Made by a program: the position numbers and the translations under genes. The notes below the pieces were generated by a model that did no database searches, was not told the origin of the DNA, and was given only the letters and a program-made list of their open reading frames with translations. Below, one piece after another: positions 7,710 to 17,081 of a stretch of DNA of 64,000 nt; within the stretch, counting starts at the first letter, position 1; every line of letters starts with the position of its first letter. Origin of the DNA: Dimorphilus gyrociliatus (taxonomy: Eukaryota; Animalia; Annelida); contig CAJFCJ010000006.1 of NCBI GenBank assembly GCA_904063045.1, positions 3,922,408 to 3,986,407 on the forward strand, given 5' to 3'.

Positions 7710-8240
7710 ATGAGTAGTAAGGTACAGTTAACTTTGGCGTTAATTAAGCCATGTGCTTTTGCCCGACCATTTATTCAGAATGATATACAGTGGACGTTGA
7801 TAAAAAATGGGTTTTACATAATAAGGTCCAAGGTTGTCAAGCTGAGTAAAGAATCAGTTTCGGATTTTTACGAAGAACACAAGAAGCGATTTTTTTACAA
7901 TAGGCTAATTCATCATATGTCGGCAGGACCTTTATCTGCTTTAATATTAGCAAAATATGGTGGCATAGCAGAGTGGAGAAGCCTTATGGGACCAACAAAA
8001 GTTTTGAAAACAGTCCACGAACAACCAGAAAGTCTCCGAGGTTTATATGGCCTTAGCGACTCAAGAAATGGTCTACACGGCTCCGATTCGGAAGAAAGCG
8101 CAAAGAGAGACATAGAATTTTTCTACCCAGAAGTGGACTACAATAAATTGTTGAAACAAGTTGATAATTCTATAAAGAACAATCTATTATATTATGATTG
8201 TCAAAAGTATATTCATTGTGAAAGAATACAAGATGTGTGA
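7710..8240 (+). CDS. NME6: Nucleoside diphosphate kinase 6-like, single exon
   Basis: QLTLALIKP start, FYEEHKKRFFYNRL, WRSLMGPTKV..PESLRGLYGLSDSRNGLHGSDS with the catalytic His. Divergent from SLC66A2 with 148 nt between start codons. Confidence 0.85.
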   Translation: MSSKVQLTLALIKPCAFARPFIQNDIQWTLIKNGFYIIRSKVVKLSKESVSDFYEEHKKRFFYNRLIHHMSAGPLSALILAKYGGIAEWRSLMGPTKVLKTVHEQPESLRGLYGLSDSRNGLHGSDSEESAKRDIEFFYPEVDYNKLLKQVDNSIKNNLLYYDCQKYIHCERIQDV

Positions 8241-8941
8241 ATTCTGAAATACCAGTTTCCATTTTTCCTTTAATTAGAAAATATTTATTATACTTTATGC
8301 TTATGGTTTAAAAGTAAAATATATATATATATATATCGTAAGTATGCCTATAAATCCGCTTAAAATGCATTAAATTAAAAAAGAAATTGTTATTAATAAA
8401 ATTAAAGAGGGCTTTTTTTCAGCAGATGTACTTTTAACATTAATCCATCTTTATCTATTTTCATTCTTTATTTTTTCTAATAGATTCTCGAATCCTGCAA
8501 ATATTATCTAATATATCATATTCATAATAGATATATATTTTACACTGTTTATCAGACATTACATAATATACTAAACAAATTTCGAACATATTGAACTTTA
8601 GTCTAACATTTAGTTTATTTTGTTATTGTTATTGTTATTGTTTATTTTTAGAATGGAATAGTAATTCATTATTAAAACAAACACTTTTTACAATCCACAT
8701 AATTAAGTAGATTATATTTAGGAAACACACAATAATTTTTTTTAATTGAGCCGCCCAAACCTTTGACTTTTTATGTTAATTTTTTAAATCGGATTTAAAC
8801 ATATATATATATATATATGCCAAAAAAAAGACAGAACGGATAGAAGAGAAGAGAGAGAGAGAGAAATAATTGATAATTGATTAACTAAATTTTTTGATTT
8901 TCTTATAATGGAATCAATTCAGGTGGAATTAAAAGTTTTAC

Positions 8942-11900
8942 ATGAACTTTAAATCAGAAGATAGATCTCCATCGTCTAATACTTATTTACCATCTAATTC
9001 TCTTTCCGGTTTAAGATGCATGTAATGTATTCTTTATCTTTATATTAGTGGATTCTTATTTTATTTTTTTTTCTATATTTAGACGAATTCCTGACGATTT
9101 GAAAAGTTCTTCTAGCGATAATTCGCTAAGGAGGTATTGAATATTTTCAAACAAACTACATGTATTACCTATATGACTATCTGTTTTTGCGTTTAAAAGA
9201 AAATCAAGAAACATTTCCGAAAAGAAAAGAAGAGATCAGTTCAATTTATTAATTAATGAATTATGGCAAATGGTTTCTTCGAACGGAGAGAAAATGGATA
9301 AAGTATCTATACTGAAAGCTGCTATTGATAGGATCAAAGAACACGGTGGTAATACTCTTTAATAGACAATAGATTCTCCATATACCCTTTTTCCGCGTAC
9401 TTTTTTTAAAAGACGAATCGAAAACATTAAAGGATGATCAATTCAATGAAGAATTAAAGCCGTTCTTCTTCACTGATGTCGAATTCTCCCGATTTATGAT
9501 GGAAGTAAAGATTTTATTTTATATATACTTTTTTTTTTACATGAAAACTTAAATAATATTAAGTAACCATTAATACTTTAATAAGTTTAGTGTTATCCAT
9601 GTTATATCCCCTTATACTTAATATAAATAAAGGCTCTGGACGCAATATTTTTGGTCCTCGATAAATCTGGAACTATTCTTTACGTTTCCCGAACTATTTT
9701 TGGATTATTAGGTTTTGCACAGGTAAGTAATTAGGTTGACAACTTAAAAATATGACTAAACACTTTCATACAGAGTGAAATTGAAAATAAATCGGTTTAC
9801 GATTATATCCATCCCAGCGACTGCAAGAAATTATACGATTTGCTAAATCTGGATGACATTACACTGTACAAGGAGACAGGTTATATTAATTTAATAAAAG
9901 AATAGTAAATAGAAAGGGAGAGTTAAAAAAGATTAAAACTTATTGAGAAAATTGATCAAATGTATATTTAATGAATCTGACGTTTGTTTCTACTTTGCTT
10001 TTATGATAGTCGGATAACAATCCCCGCTTCCATCATTTTCTTAGATCATTAATTGATTTTTTTCTTTCGCTCTGACCAGAGAAGAATCAGAAGAATCAAT
10101 TATGTGTAGAGCTACATATGAAGAGGAGAGATAATGACTACTTTAACGACAAACCCGTATTCCAATTGGTTAGGATTAGCGGTAATTTCCGGCAATACAA
10201 CCCATTTCGTTAGTAATCTATTACAATAAGTATAATTATCATTATTTTTCATTAAAAAATTAATGCCATTTTATAATCGAAATAGTTTTCTGGGCAATCA
10301 GGCCTACACTCCTATTAGTAGATCGCACAGTTAAGAAAATCCCTAAGGGTTTTTTCACTAAGATTGACTAGGGCGACGTCTTGTGGCGTCGTAATTTTTT
10401 TTCATTCTATGCTTCCCTCTAGAAAGAGAAGATGCGATTTTATAAAGTTGGTCCTTTACTGTTTTTAACCTTCTTTATTATCTTAGGTTGGTAATTAATA
10501 ATTGAATTCTCTTATCAACTCTCTCTTTGAAGTATAGCTACAAAGAGAATATGCAAATATAATATCGAAGGCATATTTATATAAAAGAAAACAATAATAT
10601 ATCTTACTTAGGCCTAATCAAGAAGCGCTTTAAGTCGGAACAATTTGATATTCTGCCAATATCCAATGCATCCTTAGATAATAAATTCGACTGTATCAAG
10701 ACGCCTTTAAAATTCTCTATATGTGTCTATGAAGCATCTCGAGATAAATATATCTCAGCATCCCTTAGAGGTACTGGAGTGTGGGAGAAACGTATGAGCA
10801 AGCGTCTACTTAAAGCTTTGTCCTTCAAGAAGAATTCGATTTTAATAGATATTGGAGCCAATATTGGATATTTTACATTATTGGCAGCTAATTTTGGTCA
10901 CAATGTTATTGCAGTGGAGCCAAATCTAGAAAGTGCTAGGAGGTTAAGCGTCTCAGTTGCGTTAAACGGGTTCCACTCGAACGTGACCATCGTTCGGAAT
11001 GCTCTATTTGATAGAATATGCAGGGCGGAAATGACTAGAAACGATGATAATCAAGGTGGAATTTGGATTAAGCGCTGTACCCCGAAAGGAGACGTAAGAA
11101 CAACCTTCCTACAGCATTTATCCGCAATTGTTAGTCCTTCTCAAGTTGGTGTCCTCAAATTAGATGTTGAGGGTTTTGAGTGCAGAGTCTTAGAAAGGTC
11201 AGAAGGATTTTTGAAAACACCTTATATATTCATGGAATGGAATAAAATGTTTATCAAACGGAACCTTTACTCGACTCCTTGCACCGAAGTTCAAATACAA
11301 GCAATGGTTCATACCCTCCTACAAAAAGGATACGTTGCACATGATATCGACAGCGGTACACAACTCGATAATTCTATCTCAGATCGATGGAACTTTCATG
11401 ACATCTATTGGAGATTAAAAGGGATGAAAGAGCTATAAAAATTGCCAGCTAAAAGCTCTGTCTAAGACGAAATAGCGGCTTAAGTTGTAGCTGTCTTGCT
11501 CTTTTTATTCAAATAGTAATCATTTAGGATCTACGAAAAAAATGAGTCCACCATTGGTAGCCTATTTCCAAATCGTAATGCTATTTTGCTCGAGGCCTGA
11601 TAAAACCCAGGATTACTAATAATGTGTTTATAGTAAAGCCAAATTGTTTTGAAATTAATAGGTAACCAAAAGTCGTATCAGGATCCGATAAATCCTTCTG
11701 ATATTAACGAAGAGAGATATTTCAGCTGTAGTATTCGGTTATTAAACGCTACTACTCTAAGAGAATTGGGAGTAGTAGATGAAAAAAATAACGAATTTTC
11801 AACTAGATATAATTTAGAATGGAAGTTTTTATACATCGATCAGAGGTAAACTAGAAATTATTCTCCTAATTTAACTTGAACTTAATTCGAAACAGATGTT

Positions 11901-13069
11901 AGAATATAAACAAGTTTTAATACTTTACAGGGCGCCCTTCCTCATAGGTTACATGCATTTCGAGTTGCTTGGTACCAGTTGTTACCAGTACTGTCATCCA
12001 GATGATATATTGAGTGTCTTCGAAGGACATACTCAACGTAATTCTATTCAATCTTTATAAATAACTCATCAATCAGTCTACTAGTCTTTTATTTTATCTT
12101 ACACTTAGTTCTAAAAGTTGGACAGCACGTATCCAACTTTTATAGATTTTTAACCAAGGGACAACAATGGATTTGGATACGTACTCACTACTTTATTACG
12201 TACAATCAATGGAATTCAAGACCTGAGTTTATCTCTGGTACTCATACTGTTTATAGGTAAGCCAGGGATATATCTCCTAGAAAAAACGAACAAAACTCGC
12301 AACCTTTCGTTCTTTATCCAGCGCATCAAGCGTAAGACAACAATATCAACAGCTTCCTTCGTGCGCATTTTCAGGTAAATTTCTCGTTTTGATTTGAAAG
12401 ATGTGCATCTTGACACATTTCTTTATTCTTAAATCCACTAGAAAAATCAGAATCGCAGAACTTAGATCTTAACTACCCGATGCGTGATCAAGTATTACTC
12501 TCATCTCTTTCTTTAGACTATTATTTATGTGACTTATAATAATACAAAATTGCAGGAGAAGCATGTGTTTTCACTTTCCGAAGCTGCTCCAGTAAATCAG
12601 CAATGCACCTATCAGGTAAAAATAATAAACTCAATTTATAAACAATCAGCCCGAATATCTTTTTACAAACTAGCAAAACATCGAAACATTCAAATTCGAC
12701 GAAATTCCGCGCACCTCGAAAGCTTATATAGACTCAACAACTAGTGATGGAAGGGTGGACTACTATTTAAGGAATCATCCCAATAGGAAACCGTCTGTAT
12801 TCCCAGTAACTTTCCAACAGAGATATTCACCGTCGCAAAGTTAATTTTATATAACAGTAATCTAAAACAGCCATCGTAACTATTGTTATTTTATAGCTAT
12901 ATCAATGAATCCTTCGTCTTCAAAAGAGCACCGAAATTCATTGCTGCAGCAGAATATCTTCTTTGGAACATCATTTTCCAATTATGATATTCATTATGAA
13001 AGTGCAACAAGTGGCGCAGAGTCAAATACGGATTTTACAGAACAGGATTTAAATAACGATTATAAATAA
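8942..13069 (+). CDS. Clock: bHLH-PAS circadian transcription factor CLOCK, multi-exon
   Basis: b[33 protein letters not shown]; PAS-A ([23 protein letters not shown]); [38 protein letters not shown] and [31 protein letters not shown], typical of CLOCK. First in-frame ATG at 8942 joins through a 61-nt intron. Most exons are absent from the ORF track. Confidence 0.92.
10432..11438 (+). CDS. FkbM-family (Methyltransf_21-like) SAM-dependent methyltransferase with N-terminal type II membrane anchor, nested in Clock intron 10182-11661
   Basis: SAM motif [15 protein letters not shown] and KLDVEGFE. Exon 1 reads [18 protein letters not shown](G) and joins by intron 10487-10611 to [26 protein letters not shown], continuous with ORF 10779-11438. 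Confidence 0.85.
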
Positions 13070-13146
13070 AAGTAACTTTTAATAATTTTTTAAATGAACA
13101 AAGATAATAATGATAATAAAAATGATTCTTTTTACACAGAAAATAA

Positions 13147-13613
13147 TCATGTATCAGATTTCTCTTCAGTTTCTGCTTGTTTTGCTGCTAAATTTGCAGC
13201 TTCATCTGTTGCTTGTTTTGCTGCTAGTTTTGCAGCTTCATCTGTTGCTTCCTTGTTTTTCTTTTGCTGAAGTTCAACAAAAGTGGCAATCATCTTTTGA
13301 TTGCCGGCCACGAATTTGCTACTGCAGGATTCCACACACATTTTCTATTGAAAAGAAACACATGAAAATTCCATCTACAGTTGAAAGAAAAGTAATATTT
13401 ATTACCTCATCCTCATTCAATCCAATACTATTAAAACACTTTGCACATCTTTGGAAACATTGTTCTGTAATACGATTATAAGTTTGAAGCATGTCCTTGA
13501 GCTGTTGAGCGATAATGTAATAACTTTATCTTTAAATTGAAAATTATTATATTAAAATATACATTTGAAATATTGCTTTCGTTTACTGGAACACCACCAA
13601 GTGACGCTGACAT
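13147..13613 (-). CDS. TIMM10B: Mitochondrial small Tim chaperone Tim10B/Tim9b (3 exons)
   Basis: Hand-spliced sequence MSASLGGVPVNESNISN-LKDMLQTYNRITEQCFQRC..LNEDE-KMCVESCSSKFVAGNQKMIATFVELQ has the twin CX3C motif and a Tim10B-like YNRxTExCFQRC. Only the last exon is in the ORF track. Confidence 0.85.
13175..13250. repeat. 36-bp tandem duplication (2 copies plus partial) in the TIMM10B tail
   Basis: gcttgttttgctgctaaatttgcagcttcatctgtt (13175-13210) and gcttgttttgctgctagttttgcagcttcatctgtt (13211-13246); encodes ATDEAAKLAAKQ / ATDEAANLAAKQ. Confidence 0.9.
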
Positions 13614-14017
13614 ATTGATATCAATTTAAAAAATATTATCAAAACAAACAATGTGTAGACACTTAAACGTTGTGATTGCTTCACAAAATTAAATTTCTTT
13701 CAATCTTATTTTGGAATAAATTCGATTTTTTATCTAAAAATTACTTATATCACGGTAAAAATAATTTAAAAAATAAAACTAAATATTAGGGATGTAAATT
13801 CGAGGAAAAGTTGTTCATCAACTCCAAATTTATACATAAACCAGTATAACGAGATATTGCGAGATTTGCGGCGTGAACGATTCATCGTCAGCAATTCCAC
13901 TGTTTTATCTCCAGCCGTTGCACTTACCTTTGAAAATTAATTTATTGTTAATTATTAAATTGCAAGGGGCTGGATATATATTATTTTTCTTATCCGACTT
14001 ATTGATATTTTTGAAGA

Positions 14018-15903
14018 ATGGAGGAAAAAGACAAAGGAGAAGATGAACAATTTGAGAGGGATTTGAAAAATATGCTAAAGGATGGTTAGTACCACTTAAC
14101 GCTGACTCAAATTATCTTATTAAAATATTATATATATTTAACAATTGATATTTAGTGGTATTATCTACTGATTCATTATCACTAACATTCTAATTATTCT
14201 TGTTAAAGTAGGGCCTTCTATAAGTCCAACTGCTGACACTGTTCAAGGCGATTTATCAACTTCCACAAATCCTATGTCTATGCCTTCGACTAGTGTTCCG
14301 AGATCTGCCTCAGGTCCAATTCAAGGAAGATTACCTGGTATTAAAATATTTTTCCTTAAAATATGAATAGTCATGTCATCGATTTGTCTAATTATTAGAT
14401 GCAGCATCCGTTCCTCATTCACCGTCTGTAAACGGACACAGTTCATCTGTTACACAGCTTAACTTAAATTCCTCATCCAAGTTGGATGCAATAAAAGACT
14501 GGTCAATTAGTACATTTAAATGCACAAAACAACTTATTTCGGAGAAATTTGGAAACAGTTCAAGAACCGTGGATGTTGAATTAGAGAGTCAAATTGAAGT
14601 TCTTCGAGATACACAAAGAAGGTAAGTTTTTGGAAAATTTAAACTAAACTTGAATAGAGAGATTTTATTCCTTAAATACATTTACCAGATATTCCAATTT
14701 ACTGAGATTGGCTAGGTTATTGGCTAATCAATTGTCTGGTGTTTTTACAACCCAAAGAGTCATGAGTGAAGCATTTAGCGATTTGGCCCAAAAATCTTTG
14801 GAACTACAAGAAGAATTTGCCTCCAATTCTGAAACTCAAAAGAACCTAGCCAAAAGTGGAGAATCTTTAATAGGAGCTCTGAATTTCTTCATTTCGGGCA
14901 TTAATACCTTAACACATAAAACGATGGAGGATACGTTGCAAACAATTCGAAATTATGAGACAGCCAGGTAATTTATATTGAGAAAAAAAAATTCATATTC
15001 ATCTTTTTAACATTAACATGTTGTATTTAGAGTTGAATATGATGCCTACCGGTTAGATGTTGAGTCGCTTCAGCTTCGTCCAAGAGATGCAACTACGATG
15101 CAAAAACTCAAGGAGGCTGAAAATAAACATGCTTATCACAAAGCAAAATTTGAGCGTTTAAGAGGGGATGTTTCGATCAAGATGAGATTTCTTGATGAGA
15201 ATAGAGTAAGTTTTATATAAGGATAGCAATTTGAAAATGATATGTACTTCAAAAAAATTACTTACCGTATATTAAAAAAAAATGTAAAGAATGTCGGTGT
15301 TAAAAACATTTTACATCCAGCCAAAGGAACAATTTATTCTTTAAAAGCTTTTAGCTTTTTATGTTTTATTTCAAAAAATTTTAATTCTTTGGGGTAGAGC
15401 ATTTATTATTTTTTGTTGGCACAGTACCAGGTATCTGTGCGACAGTTACGACACCTGCAATCATCAATGGCTTCTTGGGTCGGTTCTAATGCCGATGCGG
15501 TGTGTCCAACACCTCCTCACACAAGGTTGTGTTTCGTTGTTTGTAATGGCTGGCGCTATCCCTCTACATTATTTTATTAGGAGAAAGATTTTTTGATTTT
15601 ATTAGTGCATGGGACGCGAATCTTGGGTTTAATTTTCAGCGATTAATTAGATTTTCGTTTAGAAATTGATAATTTTAGCAGTTATTATGTTGCAACTTCT
15701 ATAATTACAAAATAGTAACTAAAGAATTATTATTTTTTTTCTTACAGGTTAAAGTAATGCAAAAACAGTTGCTACTGTTTCACAACGCTGTCTCTCATTA
15801 CCATACTGGAAATGTGGTAGCATTGGAAAAGACAATGAAACAATTTAGTATAAAATTAAAAACTCCCAATTCTTCAAATCCCTCTTGGTTAGAACAATCT
15901 TGA
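14018..15903 (+). CDS. ARFIP2: Arfaptin (AH/BAR domain)
   Basis: [57 protein letters not shown], and C-terminal [34 protein letters not shown]1 versus ARFIP2 cannot be separated in an invertebrate. Confidence 0.92.
15425..15525 (+). CDS. Candidate alternative (duplicated) arfaptin exon inside the 542-nt last intron
   Basis: Polypyrimidine tract plus cag acceptor at 15424, phase 0. Open frame [33 protein letters not shown] aligns without gaps to [26 protein letters not shown]. Candidate donor AAG|gttgtg at 15525; otherwise the frame reads through to TAG at 15578-15580. Confidence 0.65.
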
Positions 15904-17081
15904 AGCGATGAGAATAGAAATAAAATCATAAGATTTTTCTATAAAATATAGGCAGATGGGTAATTAAAAAAAAAAACTAACAAACAAATCTATTAAGTTA
16001 TTTTCTTCATCTCTGTTTCTCTATTTTTCTTCTTTTTACTATCTTCTTATTTGTTCCTTTATTTTCTTTTTGTTTCTTCTTGAAGTGCATGCTTTACTGC
16101 TTTAGATTGTTTGTGATGCTTGATGACGTATCTGGTTTTTAAGTCTTCCTAATGGACTTTTTAAAATATTTCATTAGTACAATACTAAATGTGTCTGTTA
16201 TACAAGTATTTATGTTCAGTATAATTTATATTTTTTTTCTGAATTAATTGCTATGCTTGTCTCTAAAATTAATCAACCTGAAAAAAAAAATTCTGTTACC
16301 TTGCTAGTCTTAACGTTTTCACATTCCATATATACAGTTTATATACAGTTGATTCTTGTGTTTCGTTTTGTGACCGTCATTTTTTTAATAAGGTCAATTG
16401 TATTATAGTACAAATATTTATTTACCGGGATGGGAATAACAATAATAAATACAATTCGGTTTGAAAGATAACAGTATTTTTATGATATGTTGAAAATTTC
16501 CGTTTATTTTCTAATAAGGATATATTATATGTATTACTTTATAATTAATTCTCACCTCTACGATCCCTACTGCTATTTCATGCTAAATTATTAACAGCTT
16601 CTCATATAAAGGAAAGGTTTTCCAGTACATATTTTAAGGGAAATTATAAACAAAGCCTGCCCTATTTTTTCCATTAGAAATGTAGCTAAATTGTCGTTTG
16701 GCAAAAGACGTAGCTTTGGTTGAAAGACAACATAACTAATGGCGTTCTATCTTTACATTACCACTTTTTCTCCCTTATTACAGCATCTTCAATGCGAAAA
16801 AGTAGCCAAATTAAGACCTTAGTTACATGGAAAATCTAAACGTGAACATATCAGCTCAGGATACAAGATTAGAGAATAAGTGTATAAAAAAAAATACATT
16901 TATGGTTTATAAATAGCAAAGATCTATACAACTAAAAAAAACTCTTTATTATTGAATTTCTGAGAAAAAGAGAAGAAAAAAATTGATGTGTTTTTTCTCA
17001 TTTAAATATTCTTTATAAAATCTATCACCATTAAAAAAATATCTATCCTGCTCCCCTGCCCCTGTGCAATCTTTTGAAGAT

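What the first reader, a model, noticed from the sequence alone, without database searches (positions are those of the whole stretch)
10182..11661. Methyltransferase gene nested on the same strand inside a Clock intron, splice-compatible with a CLOCK-MTase chimera
Seen: Clock introns are mostly short, but the one between PAS-A and PAS-B is 1480 nt and holds a complete sense-strand FkbM methyltransferase gene. The Clock donor (AGC G|gt, 10181) is phase 1. The methyltransferase exon-2 acceptor (tag|GC CTA, 10612) is also phase 1 and comes before the true Clock acceptor (11662). Splicing 10181 to 10612 would fuse bHLH-PAS-A in frame to the whole catalytic domain and drop the membrane anchor. I saw no AATAAA after the MTase stop, which fits read-through. 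Known: same-strand nesting is rarer than antisense nesting and creates splicing and polyadenylation competition. Inference: this could be a switch producing full CLOCK, a Golgi-type MTase, or a nuclear DNA-binding MTase chimera. Phase agreement occurs one time in three by chance.
Basis: partly seen in the sequence, partly recalled or inferred. Interest (0 to 1): 0.75.

Follow-up and report, generated by a model that had tools for sequence, protein, structure and literature searches.

The report
Methyltransferase gene nested in Clock intron
A complete sugar-type (FkbM family) methyltransferase gene lies on the same strand inside the one long intron of the Clock gene of the tiny worm Dimorphilus gyrociliatus; it looks like an ordinary self-contained nested gene, and a CLOCK-methyltransferase fusion is arithmetically possible but has no support.

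Summary
The + strand gene at about 8942-13069 is Clock: its exons match mouse CLOCK far better than ARNT or BMAL1. Its introns are 51-200 nt except one of about 1.45 kb. That intron holds a two-exon FkbM-family methyltransferase (MTase) gene: ATG at 10432, hydrophobic N-terminus, 125-nt intron, catalytic exon 10612-11438.

Corrections:
It is still phase 1.
- The intron lies inside PAS-A, before its last strand, not between PAS-A and PAS-B. A chimera would therefore carry a broken PAS-A.
- AATAAA is absent after the stop, but ATTAAA, TATAAA (overlapping the stop) and AGTAAA are present and conserved.

A genomic contig from a related worm (about 75% nt identity) keeps the same nesting. There the MTase is under purifying selection, and the 140 nt before its ATG are better conserved than coding sequence, which suggests its own promoter. 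The limpet Patella ortholog is not inside Clock.

I could reach no RNA data, so the fusion is untested. No bHLH/PAS-FkbM fusion turned up among the nine longest of the 150 closest relatives.

Earlier notes of this scan report at least six other same-strand nested genes elsewhere in this genome. Verdict: an ordinary host/nested pair, a new member of a known kind, of low interest.

The parts
8942..13069 (+). Clock gene (host), approximate coding span from the candidate ATG to the stop
   Evidence: bHLH PF00010 1.4e-11. Exon-wise best PDB hits are mouse CLOCK. Exon map with GT..AG checked. The 5' and 3' ends are inferred from open frames only.
10080..10208 (+). Clock exon for the later PAS-A strands. 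It ends in phase 1 at TTC|GTTAGT.
   Evidence: The open frame continues 9 codons past 10181. The relative has GC at 10182-83 and a conserved distal GTGAGTAATCTAT.
10209..11661 (+). Long Clock intron (1453 nt; 1480 nt if the 10181 donor is used)
   Evidence: Other mapped Clock introns are 51-200 nt. The homologous intron in the relative (L006 1249-2724) is 1476 nt.
10290..10431 (+). Single-copy conserved non-coding block just upstream of the MTase ATG; probable MTase promoter and 5'UTR
   Evidence: 85% identity overall, and 88-95% over 10330-10459, against 48% in the 3'UTR and 78% in the coding exon. Two 1-nt indels break any reading frame. Unique in the genome. No Rfam hit and no fold signal.
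10432..10486 (+). MTase exon 1: ATG plus a hydrophobic signal or anchor segment (18 codons + 1 nt), donor TAG|GTTGGT, phase 1
   Evidence: 72% aa identity with the frame kept in the relative. Mean Kyte-Doolittle 2.6 over residues 6-18. Homologues have N-terminal hydrophobic anchors.
10487..10611 (+). MTase intron (125 nt)
   Evidence: GT..AG. 69% identity. An alternative in-frame splice (donor 10490, acceptor 10570) meets a TGA in the relative.
10612..11438 (+). MTase exon 2: short stem plus the whole FkbM catalytic domain, stop TAA at 11436-11438
   Evidence: TIGR01444 4e-21 and PF05050 3e-9. SAM motif IDIGANIGY and the AVEP, DNQGG and KxDxEG motifs are conserved. Differences from the relative by codon position are 36/25/122.
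11414..11439 (+). ATTAAA (11414-11419) and TATAAA (11434-11439, overlapping the stop): candidate polyadenylation signals for the MTase
   Evidence: Both are conserved in the relative. Clock's own AATAAA (13065) likewise overlaps its stop.
11620..11661 (+). Conserved last 42 nt of the Clock intron, with AGTAAA at 11632-11637, 24 nt before the acceptor. This is either the branch site and 3' splice region or a distal poly(A) signal.
   Evidence: 90% identity against about 45-50% just upstream. AGTAAA is conserved.
11662..11845 (+). Clock exon after the long intron: last PAS-A strand, linker and start of PAS-B
   Evidence: Aligns to mouse CLOCK chain positions 226-269 of 4f3l_A, E 4.6e-7. 77% aa identity to the relative.

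Best explanation
This is an ordinary host/nested gene pair. A functional two-exon gene for a secretory-pathway FkbM-family methyltransferase sits on the same strand inside the one long intron of Clock, within the loop before the last PAS-A strand. The enzyme is probably an O-methyltransferase acting on glycans or another carbohydrate-like substrate. It is most likely transcribed from its own promoter in the conserved block at 10290-10431. It splices its own 125-nt intron and ends at a signal at or after its stop codon. Clock pre-mRNA splices over it from 10208 to 11662. The phase match between the Clock donor and the MTase acceptor is a coincidence (1 in 3). Any Clock-to-MTase splice would be low-level noise or a loss-making by-product, not a designed chimera. 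The arrangement arose in the dinophilid lineage or earlier in annelids and is kept in at least one related worm.

Shown: gene identities, structure, phases, selection, and conservation of the nesting.
Inferred: the MTase's own promoter, the 3' end, the substrate, and the absence of a functional chimera.
For: - FkbM identity and intact motifs.
- Purifying selection on the MTase: 36/25/122 differences by codon position and 81% aa identity.
- Its own ATG and hydrophobic first exon are conserved in frame.
- The upstream non-coding block is more conserved than coding sequence, is single copy and is not an RNA family.
- Conserved ATTAAA and TATAAA at the stop.
- The related-worm contig L006 is collinear: Clock exons, nested MTase, then arfaptin.
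- The Patella ortholog lies elsewhere, with no Clock exons in 48 kb and different intron positions, so the pairing is not ancient or obligatory.
- The chimera would lack the last PAS-A strand.
- No HLH or PAS domain in the nine longest relatives among the closest 150 of 1.84 billion cluster representatives.
- The published genome paper reports median introns of 66 bp, no operons or trans-splicing, and ATAC peaks in unusually long introns (PMC7854359).
- Host/nested pairs in either orientation are common in mammals (PMC11694760).
- Earlier notes of this scan list six other same-strand nested genes in this genome (leads only).
Against: - I could reach no transcript data for either species. Exact look-ups and two word searches for full or fragmentary products were blank. 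The control look-up of the neighbouring NDK protein was also blank, so these blanks carry no information.
- The MTase acceptor is as good as the Clock acceptor (pyrimidine content 0.55 against 0.50). It lies about 1 kb nearer the donor in a species whose splicing favours short introns. Some chimeric splicing is therefore plausible.
- The transcription start site and the poly(A) site are inferred only.
Confidence: 0.75

Rival explanations
1. Interference without a functional fusion. Transcription, splicing or polyadenylation of the nested MTase gene competes with Clock pre-mRNA processing. The competition could work by capture of the Clock donor by the 10612 acceptor, by premature cleavage at the MTase signals, or by promoter occlusion. 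MTase activity would then lower full-length Clock output or yield a truncated bHLH-partial-PAS-A product.
For: - Same-strand layout with a phase-compatible acceptor nearer than the true one, of equal apparent strength.
- The conserved AGTAAA lies only 24 nt before the Clock acceptor, so a distal MTase 3' end would overlap the Clock 3' splice site.
- D. gyrociliatus splices long introns less efficiently (PMC7854359).
- Nested genes are known to cause intron retention, exonisation and premature polyadenylation of their hosts (PMC3192792, PMC11694760).
Against: - No RNA evidence.
- The conserved 42 nt can be explained as the branch site and 3' splice region alone.
- ATTAAA and TATAAA at the stop suggest a proximal 3' end that would not touch the Clock acceptor.
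- I found no conserved intron-bridging RNA pairing that would indicate an evolved means of controlling the choice.
Confidence: 0.15
2. Regulated alternative splicing from the Clock donor to 10612 makes a functional nuclear bHLH-PAS-A-methyltransferase chimera, alongside full CLOCK and the membrane-anchored enzyme.
For: - Both junction partners are phase 1, the reading frame stays open to the MTase stop, and the same is true in the relative.
- The acceptor precedes the Clock acceptor.
Against: - The phase match is 1 in 3 by chance, and its conservation follows automatically from conservation of the two genes.
- The fusion would lack the last PAS-A strand.
- The enzyme has secretory-pathway features: a hydrophobic N-terminus, conserved cysteines and a conserved N-x-S sequon.
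- No bHLH/PAS-FkbM architecture in the nine longest relatives among the closest 150 representatives.
- Patella keeps the enzyme away from Clock.
Confidence: 0.07
3. The MTase has no promoter of its own. It is expressed only as an alternative 3' terminal exon or by read-through of Clock, and the apparent exon 1 is not used.
For: No transcription start has been observed. The upstream block could instead be a Clock intronic enhancer.
Against: - The ATG and the hydrophobic exon 1 are conserved in frame, with mainly third-position changes (3/1/6), and with a conserved donor.
- Homologues in other animals all begin with such an anchor.
- Without exon 1 the enzyme would not enter the secretory pathway.
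Confidence: 0.03

Closest known systems
Host/nested gene pairs (a gene wholly inside an intron of another), as catalogued in Drosophila and mammals (e.g. PMC11694760, PMC3192792)
   Same: A complete protein-coding gene lies within one unusually long intron of a host. Both genes are under selection. The nested gene has its own start. The arrangement is conserved in a related species.
   Different: The host here is the core circadian gene Clock, in a miniature annelid genome where nearly all introns are under 100 nt. The nested gene itself has an intron whose acceptor is phase-compatible with the host donor.
FkbM-family SAM-dependent methyltransferases (PF05050 / TIGR01444), e.g. FkbM, V. cholerae RfbT, and uncharacterised animal homologues such as Patella vulgata LOC126812128 and Owenia fusiformis CAH1793852
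   Same: The domain scores above the curated cut-offs. It has the SAM-binding IDxGANxG motif and the other conserved blocks. It has an N-terminal hydrophobic segment like the mollusc and annelid homologues, to which it is 39-42% identical.
   Different: The stem region is much shorter (about 293 aa against 339-347 aa). There is one intron after the anchor, whereas Patella has introns before the anchor and at two later sites. The substrate is unknown. No animal member has been characterised, as far as the library searches showed.
Animal CLOCK (bHLH-PAS), mouse CLOCK structures 4F3L and 8OSJ
   Same: The bHLH, PAS-A and PAS-B exons hit CLOCK best. The [12 protein letters not shown]...NSRPEF block in PAS-B is nearly identical.
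   Different: The gene is very compact, and the C-terminal region is short and poorly conserved even against the related worm. I did not build or search a joined model.

Membership tests
FkbM family methyltransferase (PF05050 / TIGR01444) | Profile match above the curated cut-off | tested here: met
   TIGR01444 76 bits (cut-off 37.7, E 4e-21). PF05050 37.6 bits (cut-off 22.7).
FkbM family methyltransferase (PF05050 / TIGR01444) | Glycine-rich SAM-binding motif I and the following acidic motif intact | tested here: met
   D79, G81, A82, N83, I84, G85, E102 and P103 are invariant across 8 aligned homologues.
FkbM family methyltransferase (PF05050 / TIGR01444) | Methyl transfer to a defined substrate | not testable with these tools
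   This needs expression and an enzyme assay. The carbohydrate link is inferred from RfbT-like matches (PF05575) and from a relative fused to a GT2 glycosyltransferase (P0130).
Secretory-pathway (type II or signal-anchored) enzyme | N-terminal hydrophobic segment, followed by a lumenal domain with a sequon and cysteines | tested here: met
   Exon 1 peptide: mean hydropathy 2.6 over 13 residues. N-A-S in D. gyrociliatus and N-S-S in the relative are conserved, as are cysteines across homologues. Localisation itself was not tested.
CLOCK (bHLH-PAS circadian factor) | bHLH followed by PAS-A and PAS-B, closest to CLOCK rather than ARNT, BMAL, HIF or AHR | tested here: met
   CLOCK 1.2e-19 against ARNT 4.9e-6. 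CLOCK 5e-13 against BMAL1 4.9e-4. CLOCK 4e-7. Pfam HLH and PAS on separate exons. The exon at 10082-10210 alone gave no PDB hit.
CLOCK (bHLH-PAS circadian factor) | Heterodimer with BMAL/cycle and rhythmic function | not testable with these tools
   Needs experiments.
Host/nested gene pair, same strand | The nested gene lies wholly inside one host intron, on the same strand | tested here: met
   MTase 10432-11438 lies inside Clock intron 10209-11661, both on +.
Host/nested gene pair, same strand | The nested gene is a functional, independently transcribed unit | tested here: inconclusive
   Purifying selection, its own ATG and exon 1, and a conserved upstream block support it. No transcript or transcription-start data were available.
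Chimeric (host-nested fusion) transcript or protein | In-frame splice compatibility | tested here: met
   Donors 10181 and 10208 are both phase 1, and acceptor 10612 is phase 1. The frame is open to 11435.
Chimeric (host-nested fusion) transcript or protein | Observed junction in RNA, or a fused protein in databases | tested here: inconclusive
   No such protein among the closest 150 representatives; nine long ones were checked by Pfam. The word searches were blank. However, products of this genome seem absent from the collections, and no RNA reads could be searched.

The most novel reading that the evidence does not exclude
The nested methyltransferase gene acts as a built-in gate on Clock. 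Its phase-compatible acceptor captures a regulated share of Clock transcripts. So does a conserved AGTAAA that would place a 3' end right on the Clock acceptor. The result would be a truncated or chimeric bHLH-partial-PAS-A product, or simply less CLOCK, which would couple secretory-pathway methylation and circadian output in dinophilid worms.
Probability: 0.07. Interest if true: 0.6.

Novelty: new member of a known kind. Interest (0 to 1): 0.2.

Why it matters
As it stands this is one more same-strand nested gene in a compact genome that has several.

Three points are worth keeping:
- It corrects the local gene models: the Clock donor, the intron's position inside PAS-A, and a two-exon MTase that automatic annotation may miss or fuse.
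- It gives an example of a nested gene whose start region is more conserved than its coding sequence.
- It points to a family of secretory FkbM methyltransferases in spiralian animals. These are candidates for the still unassigned glycan O-methylation activities of molluscs and annelids.

Only if RNA data showed regulated Clock-to-MTase splicing or premature termination would it bear on circadian biology.

Tried and rejected
- **Alternative MTase splice** (donor 10490 GTAATT, acceptor 10570, phase 2). It is in frame in D. gyrociliatus but hits a TGA in the relative, so I rejected it.
- **Conserved block 10290-10431 as an RNA gene or repeat.** There was no Rfam match at E<=1. The fold z-score was only -1.7. 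The block is single copy and no reading frame is preserved.
- **CTCF-like or common promoter motif** (GACTAGGGCGACG). It is not enriched in the genome: 9 hits against 13 for the reversed control.
- **E-box, D-box or full CRE elements** in 8200-14300. None found.
- **Intron-bridging RNA pairing that loops out the nested gene.** D. gyrociliatus gave -44 kcal/mol against -33 +/- 4.6 for shuffles, but the relative showed no signal (-32.6 against -34.3). It is not conserved.
- **Transcript or annotation evidence.**
  - The exact look-ups and the word searches with the Clock exon and with the first 100 aa of MTase exon 2 were all blank.
  - The NDK control was also blank, so these blanks say nothing.
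- **Short contigs of other homologues** (L009, L010). Too short for genomic context.
- **Species of the related worm** (SRA runs SRR23372228 and SRR23372231). I could not identify it from the literature.
- **L007.** It is an exact sub-stretch of L006 and so is genomic DNA, not RNA.
- **Joined models.** I built and searched no joined (spliced) Clock, MTase or chimera sequence.
- **Human DNA.** No contig looked human.

Full report
**What is there**

The window is AT-rich eukaryotic DNA (about 30% GC). The assembly size of 77.9 Mb and the very short introns fit the published description: 73.8 Mb and a median intron of 66 bp (PMC7854359).

On the + strand, between a nucleoside-diphosphate-kinase gene (7710-8240, PF00334) and arfaptin (from about 14390), lies a compact bHLH-PAS gene. 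I searched it exon by exon and by reference only.

Exon results against solved structures and Pfam:
- The bHLH exon hits mouse CLOCK at 5e-13, against BMAL1 at 5e-4.
- The PAS-B exon 12105-12257 hits CLOCK at 1.2e-19, against ARNT at 5e-6, with a near-identical [12 protein letters not shown]...NSRPEF block.
- The exon at 11664-11846 hits CLOCK at 4e-7.
- Pfam finds HLH and PAS on separate exons.

The host is therefore Clock.

**Intron map**

The hand-mapped introns, all GT..AG, are 61, 66, 64, 128, 51, 200, about 1450, 85 and 71 nt.

**The nested gene**

The long intron contains a 291-codon open frame, 10563-11435. It is an FkbM-family methyltransferase:
- TIGR01444 scores 76 bits against a cut-off of 37.7 (E 4e-21).
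- PF05050 scores 37.6 bits against a cut-off of 22.7.
- PF05575 (RfbT) gives a weak match.

The ATG is at 10432, followed by 18 hydrophobic-rich codons and the donor TAG|GTTGGT at 10486|10487 (phase 1). A 125-nt intron ends at the acceptor TTAG|GC at 10611|10612 (phase 1). The stop is TAA at 11436-11438.

The closest animal homologues are Patella vulgata LOC126812128 and Owenia fusiformis CAH1793852/3, at 39-42% identity. They likewise start with a hydrophobic anchor. They share the FxCxxTxxxxFxICVYE block, the [12 protein letters not shown] motif, and the AVEP, DNQGG and KxDxEG blocks.

The dinophilid protein has a much shorter stem region. The genome holds four more distant FkbM paralogues.

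**Related worm**

Protein P0001 (83% identical) led to a 7.1-kb contig, L006, assembled from SRA run SRR23372228. I could not identify the species.

L006 is collinear with window 8768-15968 at about 75% nucleotide identity. It carries the Clock exons, the nested MTase in the homologous 1476-nt intron, and then arfaptin.

MTase exon 2 differs at 36, 25 and 122 first, second and third codon positions and is 81% identical at the amino-acid level. That is clear purifying selection. Exon 1 keeps its ATG, frame and donor.

The 140 nt before the ATG are 85% identical, and 88-95% over 10330-10459. That is higher than the coding exon (78%) and far above the 3'UTR (48%). The block has these properties:
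- It is single copy.
- It has frame-breaking indels.
- It has no Rfam match and no significant fold.

I read it as the MTase promoter and 5'UTR. This is an inference.

1. Donor position. The frame stays open for nine further codons in both species, up to a conserved GT(T/G)AGTAATCTAT. The likelier donor is therefore 10208|10209. 10181 may be a species-specific alternative that would remove 9 residues. Both are phase 1, so the phase argument is unchanged.
2. Intron position within PAS-A. The exon after the intron aligns to the mouse CLOCK stretch that begins VCFVATVRL and runs into LEWKFLFLDHR. By the strand order of the PAS fold, and from my own knowledge of the CLOCK:BMAL1 structure (not tested here), this first stretch is the last strand of PAS-A. 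The intron thus sits in the loop before that strand. A donor-to-10612 product would carry an incomplete PAS-A.
3. Polyadenylation signals. AATAAA is indeed absent from 11439-11661. However, ATTAAA (11414), TATAAA (11434, overlapping the stop) and AGTAAA (11632) are present and conserved. Clock's own AATAAA also overlaps its stop (13065). The lack of AATAAA is therefore weak evidence for read-through.

**Is the nesting old?**

The Patella ortholog spans 28 kb. It has introns at different positions and lies antisense within a short-chain dehydrogenase gene. None of the eight Clock exon peptides finds a credible match in the 48-kb locus. The Owenia locus was withheld. The nesting is therefore shared by two dinophilid-like worms but not by a mollusc.

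**The chimera**

Arithmetically it is in frame. The MTase acceptor looks no weaker than the Clock acceptor (pyrimidine content 0.55 against 0.50). It is also about 1 kb closer to the donor, in a species that removes long introns less well. Some mis-splicing is therefore plausible.

Nothing supports a designed fusion:
- The phase match is 1 in 3.
- The enzyme has secretory features.
- The PAS-A domain would be broken.
- The nine longest relatives among the 150 closest of 1.84 billion cluster representatives are tandem FkbM repeats or an FkbM-glycosyltransferase fusion. None carries HLH or PAS.

I found no conserved RNA pairing that would loop out the nested gene.

I could reach no RNA evidence. 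The exact look-ups and the word searches for full or fragmentary products were blank. A control with the neighbouring NDK protein was blank too, so these blanks carry no weight.

**Context and verdict**

Host/nested pairs cover over a tenth of mammalian genes, with the two orientations broadly similar in frequency (PMC11694760). They are known to perturb host splicing and polyadenylation (PMC3192792).

Earlier notes of this scan list at least six other same-strand nested genes in this same genome. One of them also has unusually conserved DNA at the nested gene's start. These are leads that I did not check.

I conclude with about 75% confidence that this is an ordinary, conserved host/nested pair. 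About 15% goes to interference between the two genes without a functional fusion.

Noticed in passing
window 10395-10422: In D. gyrociliatus a strong acceptor-like site, a T/C-rich run ending CCCTCTAG|AA with 85% pyrimidines, lies just before the MTase ATG. Spliced to the phase-1 Clock donor it would give a stop after 7 codons. In the related worm the AG is TG, so the site is not conserved.
   Followed up: partly
window 10181/10208: Two in-phase Clock donors lie 27 nt apart in D. gyrociliatus (GCG|GTAATT and TTC|GTTAGT). Only the distal one is a GT in the relative. This allows possible CLOCK isoforms differing by 9 residues in a PAS-A strand.
   Followed up: partly
window 13061-13070: Clock's stop codon (TAA, 13067-13069) is overlapped by both AATAAA and TATAAA. 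The MTase stop is likewise overlapped by TATAAA. Poly(A) signals overlapping stop codons may be common in this compact genome.
   Followed up: no
window 13090-13620, minus strand: A small gene with a Tim10/DDP zinc-finger match (PF02953, E 5e-4, below the cut-off) lies tail to tail with Clock, only tens of bases from its stop.
   Followed up: partly
L008 (Patella vulgata OW026349.2:85172349-85220729): The Patella ortholog of the MTase is itself nested. It is a 28-kb gene lying antisense within a short-chain dehydrogenase gene, and it has alternative first exons (isoforms X1 and X2).
   Followed up: partly
P0041, P0042, P0053, P0116, P0130: Some relatives are very long proteins with 2-5 tandem FkbM domains. 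One has FkbM domains flanking a GT2 glycosyltransferase domain. This hints at a carbohydrate substrate for the family, or else at merged gene models.
   Followed up: no
window 12674-12841 vs L006 3789-3947: The C-terminal part of Clock is poorly conserved between the two worms (about 23% aa identity in one exon). The last exon, by contrast, keeps a conserved acidic tail ([13 protein letters not shown]).
   Followed up: no
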